DNA of 63,269 nucleotides, filler included, from Octopus bimaculoides (lineage: Eukaryota), in assembly GCF_001194135.2 (NCBI RefSeq). It is 5 parts of 5 records of this genome, joined end to end, with 100 filler letters (N's around TTAATTAATTAA, not from the genome) between each part and the next. Parts side by side here need not be neighbours in the genome. Positions count along the whole stretch, not along the records: positions 31,477 to 41,724 come from NC_068987.1; 4 more parts are not named here. One strand, given 5' to 3'. Shown piece after piece: positions 31,478 to 41,724 of the stretch. The position numbers were made by a program, and so were the translations under genes. The notes below the pieces were generated by a model that saw nothing but the letters and a program-made list of their open reading frames with translations, ran no database searches and was not told the DNA's origin. The stretch's first letter is position 1. Every line of letters begins with the position of its first letter.

Positions 31478-32310
31478 TCTAATGGGATGGTTGAGCGATT
31501 TCATAGGCAACTGAAGGCTGCCTTACGCGCCTCGCCCAACCCACAGTCTTGGGTTGAATTTCTTCCGGTCGTCCTCCTTGGATGCCGGACTGCGGTCAAA
31601 GCTGACCTGGGTTTCTCCTCGGCGGAGCTTCTTTGCGGTACCACACTGGCGTTGCCTGGTACGATGGTGGTACCAGACTCGTCACAACCACCACATCCAG
31701 AGTCCTATGTTACTCGGTTGCGTGAGTATTTCTCCAATCTTCCAGCTATGGGTCCCAGACAACAGTCACCTCCTCTCAAGTGCTAGCAGACATTGAGTCT
31801 TGGTCTCATGTGTTCATTAGGGATGATTCTGTCAAAGGACCCCTTGTTTCTCCCTATAAAGGACCCTTTCATGTGCTTTCTCGCACTCCAAAGTTCTTCC
31901 AGGTCGACGCTAATGGTCGTACAGAGGTTGTGTCTGTCGACCGTCTGAAAAAAGCGTACCTTGAAAAACCCTCAACTTCCGTGGACGACGTGCCCGTTTT
32001 TCAAACACTGCACACACCACTGTCAACATCATTACCACCACACACACCACTGTCAACATCATTACCACCACACACACCACTGTCAATATCATTACCACCA
32101 CACACACCACTGTCAACATCATTACCACCACACACACCACTGTCAACATCTTTACCAATGCATATACCAACATCAACACCATCACAAGCACACACACCAG
32201 AAACCACTCCACCTTCGTCGTTGCGACAAAACTCAAGTGACCCTTATGTCACTGGATCTGGCAGGACAGTGCATTGGCCAAAGAAACTGGCAAAGACTAT
32301 TTACGTTTAA
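31478..32310 (+). mobile_element. Gypsy/Ty3 integrase C-terminal fragment
   Basis: NGMVERFHRQLKAAL..WVEFLPVVLLGCRT, GPY/F-type motif SPYKGPFHVL..VSVDRLKKAY, tail YVTGSGRTVHWP. One frame break near 31785. Confidence 0.88.
32011..32160 (+). repeat. 30-bp tandem repeat, 5 units, in frame within the integrase tail
   Basis: Unit CACACACCACTGTCAACATCATTACCACCA, encoding HTPLSTSLPP. Confidence 0.95.
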
Positions 32311-33164: not shown

Positions 33165-36100
33165 TGGTGTATAACCACTTCCCTACAGATTAAAATACCT
33201 TCATTAGAAGATCCCCCCAGTCTTTTGGTTGACCTTTTGACTGAGGCTTCGCCTTTCTCTACCGAATTTCTTAAGCGCATTCGCGCCTACAACTGCGCCT
33301 TCCAAATGACTTTATTTGGGGCTAACATCATTAGAGAAGGAGAATTCATGCCATCCTTTAAAGTTCAGGGGCAAATATATCACAGGTTTAGTTCTCTCTA
33401 GCCAGTCGATACTGCGTCGCCTCAGTTTCTACAACTTTACTTCGTTGGCGACTATGCAAACCAGGCTACCAGACGGTAGTCCTTCTTACCTGGTACCAAC
33501 CTAGCCTTAATACGTCAGCTCCACGAGTTGATTCACGAAACAAACAGCTATGTTCACAGTTTTAAGTATGCCTTAGAAATAGCTGACTCTTCAGAGTTCA
33601 CATTAGTTATCAATGCAGATCATAGGCCTTCTGGGCAACAGGCTCGCGCTATAACGAGCTCTCGTGTAATGAGGTTGTGGTGCTTATTCAAGGTGAACAA
33701 CACCAAAATAGGGACATAGTCTTGTGCCGCCAAAACGATGCGCTCCAACGAATTTGCAAAACCCATAGGTCCTATGACGCACTTCAGTATCCCCTACTTC
33801 ATACTCATAGAGAAGACGGTTTTCACTTAAACACTCCCCAGCAAAATCTATGCTGTTAAAATTGGGTCTCAGCGCTTACAATACATACGGTTGAATCAAG
33901 CTAAGCTACGGGTTGAAAAGTACATCCATCTCAGAGATAGCATCAATANNNNNNNNNNNNNNNNNNNNNNNNNNNNNNNNNNNNNNNNNNNNNNNNNNNN
34001 NNNNNNNNNNNNNNNNNNNNNNNNNNNNNNNNNTCAAGCTAAGCTACGGGTTGAAAAGTACATCCATCTCAGAGATAGCATCAATAGCAATGTTACCCCT
34101 AGAAGGATAGGCCAATTTTGCATCCGTCTTCCTTTACTAGTAATCCTCGATATATGCACGAACGTACGCAAGATGCCATGATTTACGTTCGGTACTACGG
34201 TGGGCCCGACCTTTTCATTACCCTCACTTGTAATGCCAGGGTGAATGAAATATAAGTGAGTCTTCTGCCCGGTTAACAACCCCATGATAGGCCTGATGTC
34301 ATCGCAAGAGTTTTTAGACTGAAACTACTTAAATTCAAAGATCTCCTCACCAATGGCCAAATATTTGGCCATGTTAAAAACTTCATGTTCACTGTTGAGT
34401 GACAAAAGAGAGGCATGCCTCACGTACACAGACTTCTGTGGTTAAGTCAGAAAATAAATTCAAATGACAGACAGGCTAATTTCTGCTGAAATACCTGATC
34501 CGGGCATTGATAGTGAACTCTATGGCATAGTGAAATCTAATATGGTCCATAGCCCTTGTGGGCCTGCCTTCACAAGGAAAGATTACTTGATAAATGGTGT
34601 ATGCTCTAAGAAATATCCCCCAAAATTTGTGTTCCAGACTCAAACTGCTCAAGACAGGTACCCACTGAATAGGTGTAGGAAGCCATGCGATAGAGGCTTA
34701 ACCTTAACAATAGGGAAATTCGAAGTTGACAATAGATGAATAGTACCTTACTGTCCGCTTCTTTCAAAGACATTTAAAGTGCATATCAACGTTAAATTTT
34801 GCAATTCCATCAAATCAATCAAATATGTCTGCAAATACGTTAACAAAGGGTCCAATGCCGCCATGTTTGGCCTCTAAGGCATCAATCAACACGATGAAGT
34901 AATGCAATACTAGGCTGCACGGTACATAAGCAGCAATGAAGCGTTTTGGCGTATTTTTGGTTTTCCAACACACGAAAGGTATCCTGCCATTGTCCAGCTT
35001 GCTGTTCATCTGGAAAACGGCCAAAGAGTGTATTTCAGTGAAGCCGCTGATGCCCAGGTAGCACAGGCTCCATAAGATACTACACTTACTGCGTTTTCTA
35101 AACTTTGTCAGGTTGATCTTTTTGCACGGACACTCCTTTACCCACAAGTTCCATCCTACTACACCCAGAACAACAAGACGTGGAGGAGAAGGAAGACAGG
35201 TAAAACTGTTGAAGGGCACGAAGGCATTAAGTTCGATGATTGCCTTGGGCGCGTTTATACAGTGCACCCAAATCAGACTGAGTGCTTTCATCTCCGTCTT
35301 CTTCTACACGAAGTAACAGACCCAACTTGCTTTCAGGATTTAAGAACTGTGGATGAAAACGTTTTTGTGACATACAAGGAGGCATTTTAACAGCGTGGTC
35401 TTCTTGAAGATGATGGGCAGTGGCAAGCCTGCTTATCAGAGGCTTGTGTATCCAAATCGCCTGGAAGCCTTAGAACACTTTTTGCTGTTATACTGCACAA
35501 TTGTGCACCCAGTAGCCCGTATTTTTTGTGGCTTCAATTTAGGAATGACCTGTCTGAGGACTTTAGGCGAGCCGTTCAGCTTCGATTCCCTACTTTAAAC
35601 ATAGGTTTCACCGATACAATATACAACCTAGCGCTGATTGAGATTGAAAAATGTTCGTAACTAGACTTATTCTTGCAAAAGTAAGGCTACAAAAGTGCAT
35701 CACAATAGCTGTAGCAACTTCAAGCATAGCTGCTACTCTGCTCCCTGGTGGTAGGACTGCACACTCTACGTTTAAGCTTCCCCTTAACCTCGCAAGTTCA
35801 CCAACGCCTGTTTGTAACATTTCAAAGACGTCAGACAATGGGCAATTGCTCGCACAATGCCACTTGATTGTTTGGGATGAATGCACAATGGCTCACAAGG
35901 GTGCCCTTGAGGCATTAAATAGAACTTTGCGAGACATAAAGGAAAGCCACGAACCATTTGGGGGTGTCACTGTGTTGCTATCTGGGGACTTTAGACAAAC
36001 CTTGCCAGTAATTCTAAAAGGCACAAGGGCAGATGAAGTAATGGCATGTCTTAAGTCTTCACCTGTATGGGGTAATGTTGTTACTTAAGTTAGAATCCAA

Positions 36101-37148
36101 CATGAGAGCGCGCCTCCATGAGGACCCATTGTCAGAAGATTTTGCGAGGGACATTCTTCTTGGCAATGGTGAAGTTCCAGAAGACGGAAATGAAGATGCT
36201 GACATAAGTAACATTTGCACAATAGCCAGTAGTGTCCAGTGTCCTTAAGACCAGGTCTTCCCAGGTCTAGAAGTCCACAACAGAGATCTAGATTGGCTTT
36301 GCCAAAGAGCCATTTTGGCTCTTAAAAACGTTGTGGTCAGTGCAATCAACAACAGCCTCTTATTGCGTTTGCCTGGGGACATGACAGTCTATAAGTCAGT
36401 AGACACCGTTCCCAATCAGGGTGAGGTAGTTGATTATCCCACTGAATTTTTGAATTCCTTGGAGCCATCAAATGTACCTCCACATATTATTACTCTTCAA
36501 GTAGGTAGCCCTGTTATGCTGATAAGGAATTTAAATCCATCGACGTTGTGTAGTGGTACACGCCTTGTTATCACAAAATTACTTCCCAATGTCATTGAAG
36601 CATCGATTATGACCGTCTGTGGTAAAAGTCAAGACGTCTTGATACTGCGAATTCCCCTTGTGCCTTCGACTACTGACTTACCATTCACATTCCGCAGAGT
36701 GCAGTTTCCGATTAGACTCAGTTACGCCATGTCCATTAATAAGTCTCAGGAGCAGTCGCTGTCTGTCGTTGGACTTTACTTAGCCGAACGATGCTTTTCA
36801 CACGGTCAGCTGTATGTTGGCTGCTCAAGAGTGGGTTGTAGGAACAGTTTACATGCCTTCATCCCCCAGGGGAAAACTAAAAATGTTGTTTATAAGAAAG
36901 TTTTGTAGACTTGCTGTACTGGCGCCATATTTCAGTCCTACATTATTGCTGTTATAATTTTTGTTGCTTTATTTTTTCACTTGATTGTTGTCGTAATATT
37001 ACACGTACAGTTCCCTTAAAGAGTTACTTAGGTGTTAGTCTTTCCATAAAGCGTGAAATGTGCTTAGAGGAGGGGGTGTTAATCGCTTTATTAGTTTCTA
37101 AGCCTTTTCGAGCTAACGCACCCGGGCAGCGCCGGGTACGCCTGCTAG
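33165..37148 (+). mobile_element. Decayed autonomous Helitron (Rep HUH + PIF1-like helicase), 5'-truncated or interrupted
   Basis: IRAYNCAFQMT, FKVQGQIYH, HRSYDALQYPL, PDLFITLTCN, KRGMPHVH, SIKYVCKYVNKG, HLENGQRVYF, ATLLPGGRTAHSTFKLP, IVWDECTM, FGGVTVLLSGDFRQTLPV, QFPIRLSYAMSINKSQ, SHGQLYVGCSRV. Many stops and frameshifts. 3' hairpin plus CTAG|T. Confidence 0.93.
37121..37148 (+). other. Helitron 3' terminal hairpin and CTAG end
   Basis: CCCGG-gcagcg-CCGGG (37121-37136), then CTAG at 37145-37148 followed by T. Confidence 0.85.
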
Positions 37149-38280: not shown

Positions 38281-38732
38281 TGACTCATTTTTATGGTTGT
38301 TTTGGGAGATCGTTATCATTGAAAAATAGACAAACATGGTGATTTGTATTTGGTCGCTTTACTGGTCCTGTCTCAGAATATAACATAGATGTAAGAAAGG
38401 ATAGAGAGATATCTATGATCATATAAAGTGTTAGATCAGACAAGAAGTTAGCTAGGTAGATTGAGAGAAAGCGGTGAGGCCCTCTGTTATTGACGTAAAA
38501 ACTTCGTTTAATAAACAAAATGAGATATAACTCTCGTTACAAGAGATGACCCCTGTTATTGTCCGATCCTTGATTTAAATAAACATATTCAGAATCATAT
38601 TTCATGACGTCATAATTTATTTCTACTTATTACAAATTAACAAATGTTACCAAAAACTCACAAATCGCAATGATAAAGCAAGGGGTATAGGGGCGTATTT
38701 CATCTTTCGTATTTCATCTTTCGGGTTTCTCA

Positions 38733-39770
38733 ATGTCGGAATTGAACCATTTATGGAAAAAACTATCCTGTTCCCAAAGTTCCTCTCTTCTAAAAGTACA
38801 TCTCAATACGGAAAAATTAGAAAATCTGAAATCCAAAAGGACTAAATTTGGAGGAACAATAAACGATTGTATCCGAGTAGGTTGCAAATATCCCAATATT
38901 TCTATTGGAATCTATGCGTGTGACCAACATGCCTACACAACATTTGCCGAAATTTTCGATCCGATTATCAAAGCATACCATAATATGACTGCTTTTACCC
39001 ACCCATCAGCAGATTATGGAGATCCGAATCTCCTTAATTTATTCGCTTTAGAATCTACAAAAGATAAAGTAATTTCTTCTAATATTAATGTCAGTCGAAA
39101 TTTCGATGGCTACCGTTACCATCCAATTCTTACCAAAGGCGATCGTTTAGACATTGAGAAATTAGCCGTGGAAGCTTTAACTAACCTAGAAGGAGATCTT
39201 ATGGGGCGCTATTTTTCGTATGTTGGTATTTCACCGGAAGATCGCAAAAATCTAATCAATGAGAACATATATTTCGACAATTCCAATAGACTAAAAAAGG
39301 CAGCGGGTTGTTACGATGATTGGCCAGCCGGTAGAGGTGTTTACTATAACTTGGATAAAAATTTGGTATGTTGGGTAAACGAAGAAGATCATCTACGTAT
39401 ATTCTGCTCCGAGAAAGGACCTCGGTTGGCTGATGCTTACAAGAAGTTGGTTCGGATGCTGCAGTCCCTTGAGAAAAAAGTTATGTTTGCTCAAGGTACT
39501 TCCGGTTATTTAAACTTTTGCTGTAGTAATTTAGGAATTGCTATGACCATAAGCTTAATTGTTAAACTTCCACGTCCAGATTTAAAACCGGATTCTTTAG
39601 AAATCTGTAAAAAATATTGCCTCGAATGCAAACCCATTCAAAATATGTCTTCGTATTGGATTTGTGAGATAGTAAATAAGCGGGTGATTGGAACAACGGA
39701 ATACGAAACAGTTAATTCTGTTGCAATGGGAACGGTGCGAATATTAAATATTGAAGACGACAATAAATAA
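38733..39770 (+). CDS. Intronless, divergent arginine-kinase-like (ATP:guanido phosphotransferase family) protein, 345 aa; probable pseudoenzyme
   Basis: Uninterrupted ORF alignable over its full length: SSLLKVHL, KRTKFGGTINDCIR, GIYACD, FDPIIKAYH, DWPAGRGVYYN, WVNEEDHLRI, FCCSNLG, NKRVIGTTEYE. AATAAA overlaps the stop. Confidence 0.92.
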   Translation: MSELNHLWKKLSCSQSSSLLKVHLNTEKLENLKSKRTKFGGTINDCIRVGCKYPNISIGIYACDQHAYTTFAEIFDPIIKAYHNMTAFTHPSADYGDPNLLNLFALESTKDKVISSNINVSRNFDGYRYHPILTKGDRLDIEKLAVEALTNLEGDLMGRYFSYVGISPEDRKNLINENIYFDNSNRLKKAAGCYDDWPAGRGVYYNLDKNLVCWVNEEDHLRIFCSEKGPRLADAYKKLVRMLQSLEKKVMFAQGTSGYLNFCCSNLGIAMTISLIVKLPRPDLKPDSLEICKKYCLECKPIQNMSSYWICEIVNKRVIGTTEYETVNSVAMGTVRILNIEDDNK

Positions 39771-39910
39771 ATTAAAACAAAACTGAGATATGAACGCGGA
39801 GAAAAATGATAAACTTACGGCAGATTTTTCTTTTAATTAAAAAAAAATCGACGTGATTGGAACGTTCTTCGAAATTTAGAACATTGCCAAATTACGTAAT
39901 ATTTGTATTA

Positions 39911-41724
39911 TCTTAATATATAAAACTGAAGTTGTGTGTCTGTGTGAAGCCTTTTAAAAAGTTTATAGAAATCCACATTTTCCACTTTTTCGTAAAAATA
40001 TTTACATCAATGGAATTTTCTCGATGTGAACTTTCCAGTGCAGTAATTAGATTTTTTAAATTCCGTTTACTTTGTGTGATTTAAGGGAGATTTGGCTGTT
40101 GTTTCTAGCAACTTTTATATTTCTTCCCTTCTACCTGGAACACCGTTCTTACGCACACGCTCAACATAAAAATATAAAGAGTAAGAGTAAAAGAGGGACA
40201 GGGAGAGAGAGAGAAAGTGATACATACAACGTCATAGATTAAACTTTCATCTCAGNNNNNNNNNNNNNNNNNNNNNNNNNNNNNNNNNNNNNNNNNNNNN
40301 NNNNNNNNNNNNNNNNNNNNNNNNNNNNNNNNNNNNNNNNNNNNNNNNNNNNNNNNNNNNNNNNNNNNNNNNNNNNNNNNNNNNNNNNNNNNNNNNNNNN
40401 NNNNNNNNNNNNNNNNNNNNNNNNNNNNNNNNNNNNNNNNNNNNNNNNNNNNNNNNNNNNNNNNNNNNNNNNNNNNNNNNNNNNNNNNNNNNNNNNNNNN
40501 NNNNNNNNNNNNNNNNNNNNNNNNNNNNNNNNNNNNNNNNNNNNNNNNNNNNNNNNNNNNNNNNNNNNNNNNNNNNNNNNNNNNNNNNNNNNNNNNNNNN
40601 NNNACAACTGCAGGTTATTTTTGAGAAGTGTTCCCCACTCGGTGGTGTTTCGGAGCAAGTCGTCCATATTTGTTTCATTTTTCTCTATTATGTGCTTATG
40701 TGCATCCTTAGATTTCTAATGAAGTAATAGGCAGTGAAGAGAAGCCGTCATAAGAAAACTTTTAACTAGCTCTATTCCTTTCTCTCCCTCTCTCGCTCTC
40801 TCAAACGCATATACGTGCAAGTACACAATCATTCAGTAAAATATAACGCATGTTCGTGAATGTTTTGTAAATATACCACGATTTTCACTAGGGTGTTAGA
40901 GTTAGGGCTTTAGGGTNNNNNNNNNNAGGGTTAGGGTTTTAGGGTTAGGGTTTTAGGGTTAGGGTTAGGGTTTTAGGGTCAGGGTTAGGGGTTAGGGTTT
41001 AGGGTTACAGTTAGGGTTAGGATTAGTGTTACGGTTACGGTTTTAGGGTCAGGGTTTTAGGGTTAGGGTTAGGGTTTAGGGTTAATATTAGGGTTAGTGT
41101 TAGGATTAGGGTTGGGTAATCGTGTGGGTGTTAATGTGAAAAATTACAGATATGTGAAAAGTACCGACCCAGCCATCTATTATATCTTTTGTTGTTCTGT
41201 TTAATATATACATAGATTATGCCTCCAAAGAAGAGAGTTTGCTGGGGAAAGAAAGCAACCGGTTTAAAATGACAGCAATAGACTGCAGCAATTCACCACA
41301 TTCCAGAAGCTACTTTGAACATAATGCAAAATGGTGCATCAACATCTTCTGCTCAATCTGATAGAATTCTAGCAAAACTGTGTATCAACAGATCGCCAGC
41401 AATTGCTTCATCACAAATTGCCGTCCTAGCTCCTGCTAAAAGGGATTACCCTGCTATATATAATCAGAGCAGCGCAAAAAGTTGTTTTGCACAAGCATTT
41501 CTATAGCCAATTAGACGGATGAAATTTACGTACGCTTAATAATGTTACGCAAAACAGCCTTCTGACTTTCCCTATTAATTTCATCGTCTTTTGAATTATG
41601 AACATATTTACATCATAAGGATTTTTTCGTTGTAAGGCTTTCTTTTTTAGTTGATTTTCCCCTATCAAGACTTATCGTAGATGGCGTAATAAGTCACACC
41701 CGGACAAGGTCGGGTTATACTGCT
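39911..41724 (+). mobile_element. Probable non-autonomous Helitron (5' A|TC, 3' hairpin, CTAG cut by gap)
   Basis: Starts A|TCTTAATATATAAAACTGAAGTTGTGTGTCTG. Decayed MPPKKR start at about 41219. Ends ACCCG-gacaaggt-CGGGT..ACTGCT[gap], similar to the 37118-37148 terminus. Confidence 0.45.
40889..41117 (+). repeat. Degenerate interstitial telomere-like (TTAGGG)n array
   Basis: TTAGGG with TTTTAGGG, TCAGGG, TTAGTG and TTACGG variants, about 230 bp including a short gap. Confidence 0.9.

What the first reader, a model, noticed from the sequence alone, without database searches (positions are those of the whole stretch)
38733..39770. Intact, intronless arginine-kinase paralogue that has lost most ATP-binding residues: candidate pseudoenzyme retrogene
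Seen: a single-exon 345-codon ORF with no stop or frameshift, surrounded by heavily decayed TEs. Hand alignment to horseshoe-crab (Limulus) AK numbering, from memory of that sequence: STRVRCGR becomes SSNINVSR (R124>N, R126>N, R129 kept). CPTNLGTTMRASVH becomes CCSNLGIAMTISLI (C271 kept, R280>T, H284>I). LQVRGTRGEH becomes LECKPIQNMS (R309>K, E314 loop shortened or lost). H185>N and R330>V. The specificity loop DSGV becomes NISI (D62>N). NEEDH/R229, W221, Y68 and R193 are kept. Established: R124, R126, R229, R280 and R309 bind the nucleotide phosphates in phosphagen kinases, and cephalopods have recruited enzymes as low-activity structural proteins (GST-derived S-crystallin, ALDH-derived omega-crystallin). 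Inference: a retroposed copy kept under selection for a non-catalytic or altered role (structural, scaffolding or guanidino-ligand binding).
Basis: partly seen in the sequence, partly recalled or inferred. Interest (0 to 1): 0.78.

Follow-up and report, generated by a model that had tools for sequence, protein, structure and literature searches.

The report
Dead arginine kinase retrogene in octopods
Octopuses and the paper nautilus Argonauta carry a conserved, intron-free copy of the energy enzyme arginine kinase that keeps the enzyme's predicted fold but has lost most residues needed to hold ATP, so it is probably a non-catalytic "pseudoenzyme" with a new, still unknown job.

Summary
Window 38733-39770 (+) is an intact single-exon 345-codon ORF of Octopus bimaculoides with both phosphagen-kinase domains.

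It is not a decaying copy.
- Intact single-ORF relatives exist in O. vulgaris, O. sinensis, an unnamed fourth octopodid, and three copies in Argonauta hians.
- All carry the same Arg-to-Asn losses.
- dN/dS is about 0.21 at unsaturated dS 0.25 (binomial p 4e-11).
- The CDS has no indels, and third codon positions diverge like the flanks.
- A CRE-like block, TGACGTCATAAT, sits 115-128 bp upstream of the ATG in six gene copies, with one mismatch in the seventh.

The canonical AK of the same genome lies on another chromosome and has five GT-AG introns across 21 kb, so origin by retroposition is the best reading.

The AlphaFold model is a confident AK fold.

Best explanation: an octopod-restricted, selectively maintained pseudo-arginine kinase. 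Loss of activity is inferred, not assayed. Expression and role are untested, and the crystallin-like idea has no evidence either way. The gene is annotated only as "arginine kinase-like", and I found no paper on it.

The parts
38733..39770 (+). Complete single-exon CDS (345 aa plus stop) of the arginine-kinase-like paralogue of Octopus bimaculoides
   Evidence: ORF list and sequence. The exact protein is encoded on GCA_001194135.2 CM046607.1 as a one-piece gene call.
38772..38972 (+). N-terminal phosphagen-kinase domain (aa 14-80)
   Evidence: Pfam PF02807, E 9.9e-20.
38895..38915 (+). Altered guanidino-specificity loop NISIGIY (canonical DSGVGIY; Limulus 62-68)
   Evidence: D62>N, S63>I, G64>S, V65>I; Y68 is kept in Octopus and is F in Argonauta.
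39075..39098 (+). SSNINVSR motif replacing canonical STRVRxGR. R124>N and R126>N are lost; R129 is kept.
   Evidence: N117 and N119 are invariant in all seven genes of the clade.
39153..39758 (+). C-terminal 'catalytic' phosphagen-kinase domain (aa 141-342), scoring about half the bits of the canonical enzyme
   Evidence: Pfam PF00217 gives 132 bits here, 258 bits for canonical P0314, and 110-128 bits for the other clade members.
39378..39398 (+). Retained NEEDHLR motif (E224, E225, D226, H227, R229)
   Evidence: Only the Argonauta copy P0002 has E225>A.
39519..39560 (+). CCSNLGIAMTISLI replacing CPSNLGTTMRASVH. C271 and N274 are kept; P272>C, R280>T, H284>I.
   Evidence: Position 280 is T/Y/V and position 284 is I/L/M across the clade.
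39621..39653 (+). Shortened catalytic loop LECKPIQNMSS (canonical LQARGIHGEHTES). R309>K, H312>Q, and a 3-residue deletion removes E314.
   Evidence: The deletion and Q303 are shared by all clade members; position 309 is K or R.
38604..38621 (+). Conserved upstream block ATGACGTCATAATTTATT containing a full palindromic CRE (TGACGTCA, 38605-38612), 128 bp before the ATG. Candidate core promoter element.
   Evidence: Alignment A2. The 12-mer TGACGTCATAAT occurs once per gene copy at -115 to -128 in O. bimaculoides, O. vulgaris, O. sinensis, the fourth octopodid and two Argonauta copies; the third has one mismatch. One TGACGTCA is found in the window against 0.12 expected.

Best explanation
The ORF is a functional gene, not a relic. 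It belongs to an octopod-restricted family of arginine-kinase-derived proteins.

Origin (inferred). A spliced AK mRNA of a coleoid ancestor was reverse-transcribed and inserted at a new locus. The source was most likely the isoform that uses the alternative first exon '1b'. This happened before the Octopus/Argonauta split.

Loss of the nucleotide site (substitutions shown, consequence inferred). In the stem lineage the protein lost the nucleotide half of the active site:
- R124N, R126N, R280T/Y/V and R330V/Q/L/M removed four of the six arginines that hold the phosphates.
- H185N and H284I/L/M removed the adenine-ring contacts.
- A 3-residue deletion removed E314, one of the two guanidinium-orienting glutamates.

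What remains.
- The model predicts the full two-domain AK fold.
- Part of the guanidinium/transferred-phosphate pocket is kept: E225, C271, N274, R229 and K/R309.
- Much of the cleft lining is strongly conserved, in a new form: SSNINV, N178 and Q303 are invariant.

Mechanism (inferred). The protein can no longer bind MgATP productively or transfer phosphate. It acts by binding something rather than by turnover. Candidates are a small guanidino or phospho-guanidino ligand held in the remodelled cleft, or a protein partner.

Persistence (shown). The gene has been under purifying selection for the whole history of incirrate octopods, has a conserved CRE-containing promoter-proximal element, and has duplicated to at least three copies in Argonauta.
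For: Shown:
- Intact ORF with both PK domains.
- Residue losses established by two independent alignments and shared by all clade members.
- The roles of these residues come from the literature. S122/H185/H284 contact the nucleotide ring and R124/R126/R229/R280 form the phosphate-guiding cluster (PMC12467219). R126/R229/R309/R330 H-bond the transferring phosphoryl, and E225/E314/C271 are essential for the guanidinium (PMC11075012).
- Seven intact single-ORF genes: O. bimaculoides, O. vulgaris, O. sinensis, a fourth octopodid in SRR11869384/85/91/94, and three in A. hians, one of them unannotated at L004:2203-3300.
- NG86 dN/dS is 0.21 at dS 0.247 (p 4e-11), 0.22 at dS 0.06 (p 3.6e-4), and 0.20-0.26 for Octopus versus Argonauta, where dS is saturated.
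- Codon-position identity is 94.5/95.1/85.3% with no indels in the CDS. The flanks are 86-89% identical and have indels.
- Of 84 columns invariant in 24 canonical AKs, 44 are kept, 11 are replaced by a different residue that is itself invariant in the clade, and 29 vary.
- Conserved upstream CRE block.
- The parent gene has five GT-AG introns and lies on another chromosome.
- The N-terminus scores better against exon 1b than exon 1a in all five clade proteins.
- The clade is monophyletic (100% bootstrap) and sits inside mollusc AKs (87%). Identity is highest to coleoid AKs (42.7-44.2%). It shares 3 of 19 coleoid-specific states (C213, M271, E73) against 0 of 18 arthropod-specific ones.
- AlphaFold pLDDT 94.4 and pTM 0.90; Foldseek TM 0.89-0.93 to substrate-free AK structures.
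Against: - No enzymatic, ligand-binding or expression data exist here. Inactivity is inferred from residues.
- R229 is kept and position 309 stays basic. E225 and C271 are kept. Residual or altered chemistry, or a different phosphoryl donor, cannot be excluded.
- Newly fixed R128 could in principle compensate. I had no coordinates to test this.
- No poly(A) relic or target-site duplications are recognisable, so retroposition rests on intron absence alone.
- The NJ tree places the clade at the base of mollusc AKs rather than with coleoids. This is probably long-branch attraction, and coleoid affinity rests on three shared states and 2-4% higher identity.
- The fourth-species Logan contigs are collinear with genomic DNA through the promoter, so they are not proof of transcription.
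- The AlphaFold alignment is dominated by canonical AKs, which biases the model toward the AK fold.
- The dN/dS of the canonical AK against an unidentified transcript was 0.165. The short-term ratio therefore does not by itself separate the two genes.
Confidence: 0.75

Rival explanations
1. It is still a working phosphotransferase. It would use a rebuilt nucleotide site or a different phosphoryl donor or acceptor, so it would be a neo-functionalised kinase rather than a pseudoenzyme.
For: E224/E225/D226/H227/R229, C271, N274, R329 and a basic residue at 309 are retained. The cleft lining is more conserved than the rest of the protein: 55 of 84 canonical-invariant columns are fixed in the clade against 100 of 261 other columns. 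R128 is a clade-specific invariant basic residue.
Against: Four of the six phosphate-binding arginines, both adenine-contacting histidines and E314 are gone in every member. Positions 280, 284 and 330 now vary among hydrophobic or neutral residues, which is not the pattern of a rebuilt binding site. One Argonauta copy has also lost E225. The specificity loop is altered at D62, S63 and G64.
Confidence: 0.08
2. It is a neutrally decaying processed pseudogene whose frame happens still to be open.
For: It is intronless, sits among decayed transposons, and has lost catalytic residues.
Against: Seven independent intact ORFs exist across lineages whose synonymous sites are saturated (dS 1.2-1.5). dN/dS is about 0.2 with p down to 4e-11, the CDS has no indels, and an upstream motif is conserved.
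Confidence: 0.01
3. The intronless copy did not arise by LINE-mediated retroposition. It arose by DNA-level duplication followed by complete intron loss, or by capture and dispersal by a Helitron.
For: No poly(A) tail or target-site duplication is visible. A same-strand Helitron remnant lies upstream in Octopus (window about 33500-36908). A block of about 250 bp from it is 70% identical to sequence 0.5 kb upstream of one Argonauta copy. The Argonauta copies sit at two scaffolds and share the promoter, so at least those duplications were DNA-based.
Against: All five coding introns are absent at once and the gene is on a different chromosome from the parent, which is the classic retrocopy signature. 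The Helitron block is absent upstream of the other two Argonauta copies, and Helitron coding sequence is a repeat, so the match may be coincidental. Hallmarks of an insertion this old would be expected to have eroded.
Confidence: 0.1
4. It is an abundant structural protein recruited like a cephalopod enzyme-crystallin, or a sperm or testis structural protein.
For: Cephalopods have recruited GST and ALDH as crystallins (established knowledge, not tested here). Retrogenes are often testis-expressed (established knowledge). The proteins have 11-13 cysteines against 5-6 in canonical AKs, and most have a more basic pI. The promoter-proximal element is a full CRE.
Against: No expression data of any kind were available. 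No paper links an AK-like protein to octopus lens, sperm or any other tissue. The strong conservation of the remodelled cleft (SSNINV, N178, Q303) suggests binding-site constraint rather than only bulk structural constraint.
Confidence: 0.1

Closest known systems
Canonical cephalopod arginine kinase (O. bimaculoides XP_014774299.1; allergen Oct f 2 of Amphioctopus fangsiao; EC 2.7.3.3)
   Same: Same two Pfam domains and the same predicted fold. They share the NEEDHLR motif, C271, N274, R129, R193 and W221, the mollusc-type N-terminus, and the coleoid-specific C213 and M271.
   Different: Only 43% identical. It is single-exon against six coding exons. It lacks R124, R126, R280, R330, H185, H284 and E314, and the specificity loop is altered. 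It has about twice the cysteines. Its protein sequence evolves about 3.5 times faster between Octopus and Argonauta: 41% against 12% residue differences.
Pseudoenzymes in general (catalytically dead paralogues kept for binding, scaffolding or regulation, e.g. pseudokinases or the AdoMetDC prozyme, PMC5201418)
   Same: It is a homologue of an enzyme, lacks key catalytic and cofactor-binding residues, and is under purifying selection with conserved orthologues.
   Different: I found no described pseudoenzyme of the phosphagen-kinase family. Most canonical AKs are monomers (own knowledge), so a prozyme-like heteromer is not an obvious mechanism. No partner or ligand is known.
Other degenerate phosphagen-kinase-like domains in sequence databases (3-4-domain protist proteins such as Mallomonas annulata P0052; single-domain proteins of the snail Bulinus truncatus P0096 and the weevil Ceutorhynchus assimilis P0126)
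   Same: They have PK-fold domains in which several of the same eleven catalytic positions are substituted.
   Different: These are independent lineages. Each one tested by BLASTP is closer to canonical AKs than to the octopod clade, and they show different substitution patterns. All are uncharacterised as far as I could find.
Cephalopod enzyme-crystallins (GST-derived S-crystallin, ALDH-derived omega-crystallin)
   Same: Taxon-restricted enzyme duplicates with reduced or lost activity in cephalopods (established knowledge).
   Different: There is no evidence of lens expression or abundance for this protein. The comparison is analogy only.
McsB protein-arginine kinase (bacterial PK-like domain)
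   Same: Distant homologue of the same catalytic domain (PDB 6fh1, 8wtc; E 1e-6 to 4e-7).
   Different: McsB is an active ATP-dependent kinase. The octopod protein derives from animal AK and lacks the nucleotide site.

Membership tests
Phosphagen (ATP:guanidino) kinase superfamily, by homology and fold | N-terminal helical domain plus C-terminal alpha/beta domain (Pfam PF02807 + PF00217) | tested here: met
   E 9.9e-20 and 2.5e-38, both above the gathering scores. AlphaFold pLDDT 94.4 with Foldseek TM 0.89-0.93 to AK structures.
Phosphagen (ATP:guanidino) kinase superfamily, by homology and fold | Active-site signature around the reactive cysteine, C-P-x-[ST]-N-[IL]-G-T (PROSITE-type pattern, recalled from memory) | tested here: not met
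   Octopus has C-C-S-N-L-G-I; Argonauta has C-[LV]-S-N-[IL]-G-T. The Pro is lost in all members and the Thr is also lost in Octopus.
Arginine kinase, EC 2.7.3.3 (as an enzyme) | Arginine cluster binding the nucleotide phosphates (R124, R126, R229, R280, R309, R330) | tested here: not met
   Only R229 is kept and position 309 is K/R. R124N and R126N are fixed; 280 is T/Y/V; 330 is V/Q/L/M.
Arginine kinase, EC 2.7.3.3 (as an enzyme) | Adenine-ring contacts S122, H185, H284 | tested here: not met
   S122 is kept; H185N is fixed; H284 is I/L/M. Roles are from PMC12467219.
Arginine kinase, EC 2.7.3.3 (as an enzyme) | Guanidinium-orienting triad E225, E314, C271 | tested here: not met
   E225 is kept (A in one Argonauta copy) and C271 is kept. 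E314 is removed by a shared 3-residue deletion. Roles are from PMC11075012.
Arginine kinase, EC 2.7.3.3 (as an enzyme) | Specificity loop D62-S63-G64-V65-G66-x-Y68 | tested here: not met
   N/R/I - I/S/T - S/T - I - G - x - Y/F.
Arginine kinase, EC 2.7.3.3 (as an enzyme) | Measured ATP:L-arginine phosphotransferase activity | not testable with these tools
   Needs recombinant protein.
Retrogene (processed, functional retrocopy) | Coding region lacks all introns of an intron-bearing parent located elsewhere | tested here: met
   The parent has 6 coding exons and 5 GT-AG introns over 21.25 kb on CM046603.1. The copy is one exon on CM046607.1.
Retrogene (processed, functional retrocopy) | Poly(A) tract and target-site duplications at the insertion | tested here: inconclusive
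   There is only a short A-run at 39842-39850, conserved within Octopodidae but not in Argonauta, and no flanking direct repeats. Erosion is expected at this age.
Retrogene (processed, functional retrocopy) | Evidence of function (selection, conserved orthologues) | tested here: met
   dN/dS is about 0.21 (p 4e-11), with seven intact genes.
Retrogene (processed, functional retrocopy) | Transcription | not testable with these tools
   The only non-genome-assembly contigs (L007-L010) are collinear with genomic DNA and may be genomic.
Pseudoenzyme | Enzyme homologue lacking residues required for catalysis or cofactor binding, yet evolutionarily maintained | tested here: met
Pseudoenzyme | Demonstrated absence of catalytic activity and a non-catalytic function | not testable with these tools
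   Needs biochemistry and genetics.
Enzyme-crystallin | Very high expression in lens | not testable with these tools
   No expression data; no literature.

The most novel reading that the evidence does not exclude
The clade is a ligand-binding protein that has kept the guanidinium/phosphoryl half of the AK pocket (E225, C271, N274, R229, K/R309) and discarded the nucleotide half. It would then bind arginine or phosphoarginine without turning it over. That would make it a phosphagen sensor, buffer or carrier specific to octopods, driven by a CRE (cAMP-responsive) promoter. It would be the first functional pseudo-phosphagen-kinase, and a new way of reading cellular energy state.
Probability: 0.12. 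Interest if true: 0.8.

Novelty: new variant of a known kind. Interest (0 to 1): 0.58.

Why it matters
Phosphagen kinases are textbook enzymes whose active site is almost invariant across animals. In 24 canonical AKs and a creatine kinase examined here, R124, R126, H185, R280, H284 and R330 never vary.

This clade has dropped that nucleotide site and has still been kept by selection since before octopuses and argonauts diverged. It has also been amplified in Argonauta. That makes it a natural experiment on what an AK fold can do without ATP.

It adds a well-supported case of a functional retrogene in cephalopods. It also flags that proteins annotated "arginine kinase-like / Oct f 2-like" in octopod genomes should not be counted as kinases in metabolic, allergen or gene-family analyses.

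The database scan suggests that dead phosphagen-kinase domains have arisen repeatedly (protists, a snail, a weevil) and have gone unstudied.

Tried and rejected
- The direct homology search and the clade-profile search returned no canonical cephalopod AK, because of the word filter. I therefore searched with a retrieval-only chimera: the window protein with canonical motifs restored. This pulled canonical coleoid AKs to the top of the single-domain hits. The chimera was used only to fetch real proteins; all comparisons use real sequences.
- I looked for squid, cuttlefish or Nautilus members of the clade. There are none. Every other degenerate or high-ranking representative tested is closer to canonical AKs. 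Absence from decapodiforms is provisional.
- I tested whether the Logan contigs L007-L010 are transcripts. They share one 5' end and stop in an (AT)n repeat, but they are collinear with genomic sequence through the promoter. I rejected them as expression evidence and used them only as a fourth species.
- I looked for synteny or shared neighbours between Octopus and Argonauta. Only a Helitron-derived block matches. UGDH lies about 9.6 kb downstream in O. bimaculoides but was not detectable in the other loci's flanks.
- The Rfam scan of the piece gave no hit.
- The 3' flank alignment shows only patchy conservation and no shared poly(A) relic.
- Seven literature searches found nothing on this paralogue or on phosphagen-kinase pseudoenzymes.
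- The NJ tree could not resolve placement within molluscs (3-4% bootstrap with cephalopods), so I used shared derived states instead.
- A spatial check for compensating basic residues was not possible, because no model coordinates are returned.
Full report
**1. What is in the sequence**

Window 38733-39770 (+) is one uninterrupted ATG-to-TAA frame of 345 codons. Pfam finds both halves of a phosphagen kinase: PF02807 at aa 14-80 (E 9.9e-20) and PF00217 at aa 141-342 (E 2.5e-38). The closest solved structures by sequence are arginine kinases (AKs), for example L. vannamei 4bhl (E 2.9e-64) and Limulus 1m15 (E 1.2e-59).

An exact-protein look-up places the window on Octopus bimaculoides chromosome record CM046607.1 (GCA_001194135.2). 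There the gene is called as a single piece. A UDP-glucose dehydrogenase gene starts about 9.6 kb downstream.

The rest of the piece is repeat-rich:
- PIF1-helicase fragments of a decayed Helitron at 35651-36908.
- Helitron-type coding text upstream of them.
- An integrase-like ORF tail with a 30-bp tandem repeat at 31487-32310.
- TTAGGG-like repeats at 40927-41117.

**2. The residue claims**

I parsed the HMMER alignment to 4bhl, whose numbering coincides with Limulus AK over the aligned range. The result:
- Lost or changed: D62>N, S63>I, G64>S, R124>N, R126>N, H185>N, P272>C, R280>T, H284>I, R309>K, R330>V.
- Deleted: E314-H315-T316 fall in a 3-residue deletion.
- Kept: Y68, S122, R129, R193, W221, E224, E225, D226, H227, R229, C271, N274, R329.

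A separate MAFFT alignment with 24 canonical AKs and a creatine kinase agrees. It also shows that R124, R126, H185, R280, H284 and R330 are invariant in all of those enzymes.

The functional meaning of these residues comes from the literature:
- S122, H185 and H284 contact the nucleotide ring, and R124, R126, R229 and R280 form the cationic cluster that guides ADP/ATP (PMC12467219).
- R126, R229, R309 and R330 H-bond the transferring phosphoryl group.
- E225, E314 and C271 are the essential guanidinium-orienting residues, and loop 62-68 closes on the arginine headpiece (PMC11075012).

**3. It is a conserved gene family, not a relic**

Relatives found:
- P0001, 97% identical, in O. vulgaris (CAI9726195.1) and O. 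sinensis (XP_029639512.1).
- Two Argonauta hians proteins, 59-60% identical: GAB1608683.1 and GAB1608508.1.

In every genome the gene range equals 3 x (aa + 1), so each is a single exon.

A third intact, unannotated Argonauta copy of 365 aa lies 7.8 kb upstream of one of them, at L004:2203-3300.

Four Logan contigs from runs SRR11869384/85/91/94 carry an intact 345-aa orthologue from a fourth, unnamed octopodid. It is 90% identical at the protein level and 91.6% at the nucleotide level.

All seven genes have N at positions 124 and 126. The six whose loop region was aligned or read share N at 185, Q at 312 and the 3-residue loop deletion; for the fourth octopodid this was read directly from its sequence. 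Positions 280 (T/Y/V), 284 (I/L/M) and 330 (V/Q/L/M) drift among uncharged residues. The nucleotide site was therefore lost once, in the common ancestor, and has stayed lost.

**4. Selection**

Nei-Gojobori estimates:

| Comparison | dS | dN/dS | One-sided binomial p against neutrality |
|---|---|---|---|
| O. bimaculoides vs fourth octopodid | 0.247 | 0.21 | 4e-11 |
| O. bimaculoides vs O. vulgaris | 0.06 | 0.22 | 3.6e-4 |
| Octopus vs Argonauta | 1.2-1.5 (saturated) | 0.20-0.26 | not computed |

- Codon-position identities between O. bimaculoides and the fourth species are 94.5%, 95.1% and 85.3%.
- The CDS has no indel in 1038 bp. The flanks are 86-89% identical and carry indels.
- Of 84 alignment columns invariant in canonical AKs, 44 are kept, 11 are replaced by a different residue that is itself invariant in the clade (including R124N, R126N, H185N, H312Q), and 29 vary. 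Overall, 155 of 345 positions are invariant across five proteins.
- The Octopus-Argonauta protein divergence is 41%, against 12% for the canonical AK of the same two taxa. The clade evolves faster than the enzyme but is clearly constrained.

**5. A conserved upstream element**

Upstream sequences of Octopus and Argonauta are otherwise barely alignable. The exception is the block ATGACGTCATAATTTATT, which contains the palindromic CRE TGACGTCA.
- The 12-mer TGACGTCATAAT occurs exactly once per gene copy, 115-128 bp before the ATG, in O. bimaculoides (window 38605-38616), O. vulgaris, O. sinensis, the fourth octopodid and two Argonauta copies.
- The third Argonauta copy has one mismatch.
- There are no other hits in about 21 kb per locus.
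- One TGACGTCA is found in the whole window against 0.12 expected.

I read this as a conserved promoter-proximal element. That is an inference. It also shows that the Argonauta copies arose by DNA duplication of an already established gene together with its promoter.

**6. Origin**

The canonical O. bimaculoides AK (P0314, XP_014774299.1, "arginine kinase Oct f 2") was retrieved with a retrieval-only chimeric query. It lies on CM046603.1 and spans 21.25 kb. I rebuilt its CDS exactly from six exons with GT-AG introns after codons 51 (phase 1), 137 (0), 187 (2), 242 (0) and 303 (1). The window ORF runs straight through all five positions.

The parent locus also holds an alternative first exon, 1b, at L006:12961-13110 (MSDLKELWETLKKA...). 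In all five clade proteins the N-terminus scores higher against exon 1b than against exon 1a (113-147 versus 78-118). This suggests the retrocopied mRNA was the exon-1b isoform, or that exon 1b keeps the ancestral state.

Phylogenetically:
- The clade is monophyletic (100% bootstrap) and lies within mollusc AKs (87%) on a long branch.
- It is most similar to coleoid AKs: 42.7-44.2%, against 37-41% for other molluscs and 34-36% for arthropods.
- It shares 3 of 19 coleoid-specific states (C213, M271, E73), 13 of 36 mollusc-versus-arthropod states, and none of 18 arthropod-specific states.

No poly(A) relic or target-site duplication survives. No squid, cuttlefish or Nautilus member appeared in any search.

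The best reading is one retroposition in the octopod stem, or earlier in coleoids with later loss. It predates the Octopus-Argonauta split, which is of the order of 100 My from my own knowledge. The saturated dS is consistent with that depth.

**7. Structure**

An AlphaFold2 model built from a 46-sequence alignment is confident: mean pLDDT 94.4, pTM 0.90, no disordered segment. Foldseek aligns it to substrate-free AK structures at TM 0.89-0.93 and to transition-state (closed) forms at 0.85-0.86. The model predicts that the fold is intact.

Two caveats apply. The alignment is dominated by canonical AKs. From sequence alone, R128 is a clade-invariant basic residue absent from canonical AKs.

**8. 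How it most likely works**

Shown: the fold is predicted to be kept, the nucleotide-side residues are removed, the E314 loop is shortened, the specificity loop is altered, and the gene is under purifying selection with a conserved upstream element.

Inferred: the protein cannot bind MgATP/MgADP productively and is not an ATP:arginine phosphotransferase. It works by binding.

The retained residues (E225, C271, N274, R229, K/R309) are those nearest the guanidinium and the transferred phosphate. Cleft-lining segments are the most conserved parts of the clade: SSNINV, LEGDLMG-YF-YVG, FD-SN-L-KAAGC-DDW, CW-NE-DH-R-FC. A remodelled ligand pocket therefore seems slightly more likely than a purely structural role.

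The proteins are also cysteine-rich (11-13 against 5-6) and mostly more basic than AK. I cannot interpret this without expression data.

**9. Comparison with what is known**

By homology and fold it is a member of the phosphagen-kinase superfamily. It fails the defining catalytic features of arginine kinase, so it should not be filed as EC 2.7.3.3. It fits the definition of a pseudoenzyme and of a functional retrogene, although activity and transcription are untested.

I found no publication on this paralogue or on any phosphagen-kinase pseudoenzyme. Databases call it only "arginine kinase-like" or "Oct f 2-like".

It is not unique in kind. These are mostly 3-4-domain proteins such as one from the chrysophyte Mallomonas, plus single-domain proteins of the snail Bulinus and a weevil. 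All of those tested by BLASTP are closer to canonical AKs than to the octopod clade, so they are independent events.

**10. Verdict**

It is a new variant of a known kind: a pseudoenzyme retrogene, apparently the first documented for this enzyme family. Interest is moderate to fairly high for enzyme-evolution and cephalopod-genomics specialists. It is limited by the absence of expression or biochemical data and by the general frequency of pseudoenzymes.

Noticed in passing
L004:2203-3300 (+) (Argonauta hians BAAFZT010000067.1): A third intact 365-aa copy of the dead-AK gene lies 7.8 kb upstream of the annotated copy GAB1608508.1. Its exact sequence is not in the protein collection, so it is apparently unannotated.
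   Followed up: yes
L006:12961-13110 (+) (O. bimaculoides canonical AK locus, CM046603.1): An alternative first coding exon ('1b', MSDLKELWETLKKA-DSKSLLKKHLTPARYEKLKNKKTKFGGTLADCIRSG) sits inside intron 1 of the canonical AK gene. It resembles the ancestral mollusc N-terminus and the retrogene N-terminus more than exon 1a does.
   Followed up: partly
window 34953-35228 and L004:1447-1696: A block of about 250 bp is about 70% identical between Octopus (3.5 kb upstream of the gene, inside a decayed Helitron) and Argonauta (0.5 kb upstream of copy C), on the same strand. It reads like Helitron coding sequence and is absent upstream of the other two Argonauta copies. It is either coincidence between repeats or a trace of Helitron involvement in moving the gene.
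   Followed up: partly
window 33528-36908 (+): A decayed Helitron-like element. PIF1 helicase fragments are at 35651-36085 (E 3.5e-45) and 36315-36905 (2B domain, E 2.7e-16), preceded by broken ORFs with Helitron Rep-region text at 34464-34739. The region is shared with O. vulgaris at 88-92% identity, so it is older than that split.
   Followed up: partly
window 40927-41117: An interstitial array of about 30 degenerate TTAGGG-type (telomere-like) hexamers lies about 1.2 kb downstream of the gene.
   Followed up: no
window 38694-38729: A 14-bp unit (CGTATTTCATCTTT) is tandemly duplicated just before the ATG in O. bimaculoides. In the upstream alignment O. vulgaris has a 6-bp gap and one substitution within the repeat, and the Argonauta copies lack it.
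   Followed up: no
window 31487-32310 (+), repeat at 32011-32199: An integrase-like ORF tail (MVERFHRQLKAALRA...) is followed by a 30-bp x 6.3 tandem repeat that encodes PPHTPLSTSL units. There is no Pfam hit. It is probably the 3' end of an LTR-type retroelement cut by the piece's edge.
   Followed up: no
proteins P0051-P0068, P0052 (Mallomonas annulata), P0096 (Bulinus truncatus), P0126 (Ceutorhynchus assimilis): Many phosphagen-kinase-like domains in the representative library have lost several of the eleven catalytic positions scored. Most are 1000-2400-aa proteins with 3-4 tandem degenerate domains. Some are single-domain animal paralogues. They appear to be independent of the octopod clade and uncharacterised.
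   Followed up: partly
L007-L010 (Logan contigs of SRR11869391, SRR11869384, SRR11869394, SRR11869385): Four runs of an unnamed octopodid give near-identical 1.62-1.63 kb contigs with the same first base and an (AT)n end. One run differs by a single amino acid (N84S), a likely polymorphism. Whether these runs are DNA or RNA could not be determined here.
   Followed up: partly
window 38733-39770 and clade proteins: The clade proteins have 11-13 cysteines against 5-6 in canonical AKs, including clade-invariant new ones (C193, C225, C299). Their pI is about 7.9-8.7 (5.7 in one Argonauta copy) against 6.4-6.8 for canonical AKs.
   Followed up: no
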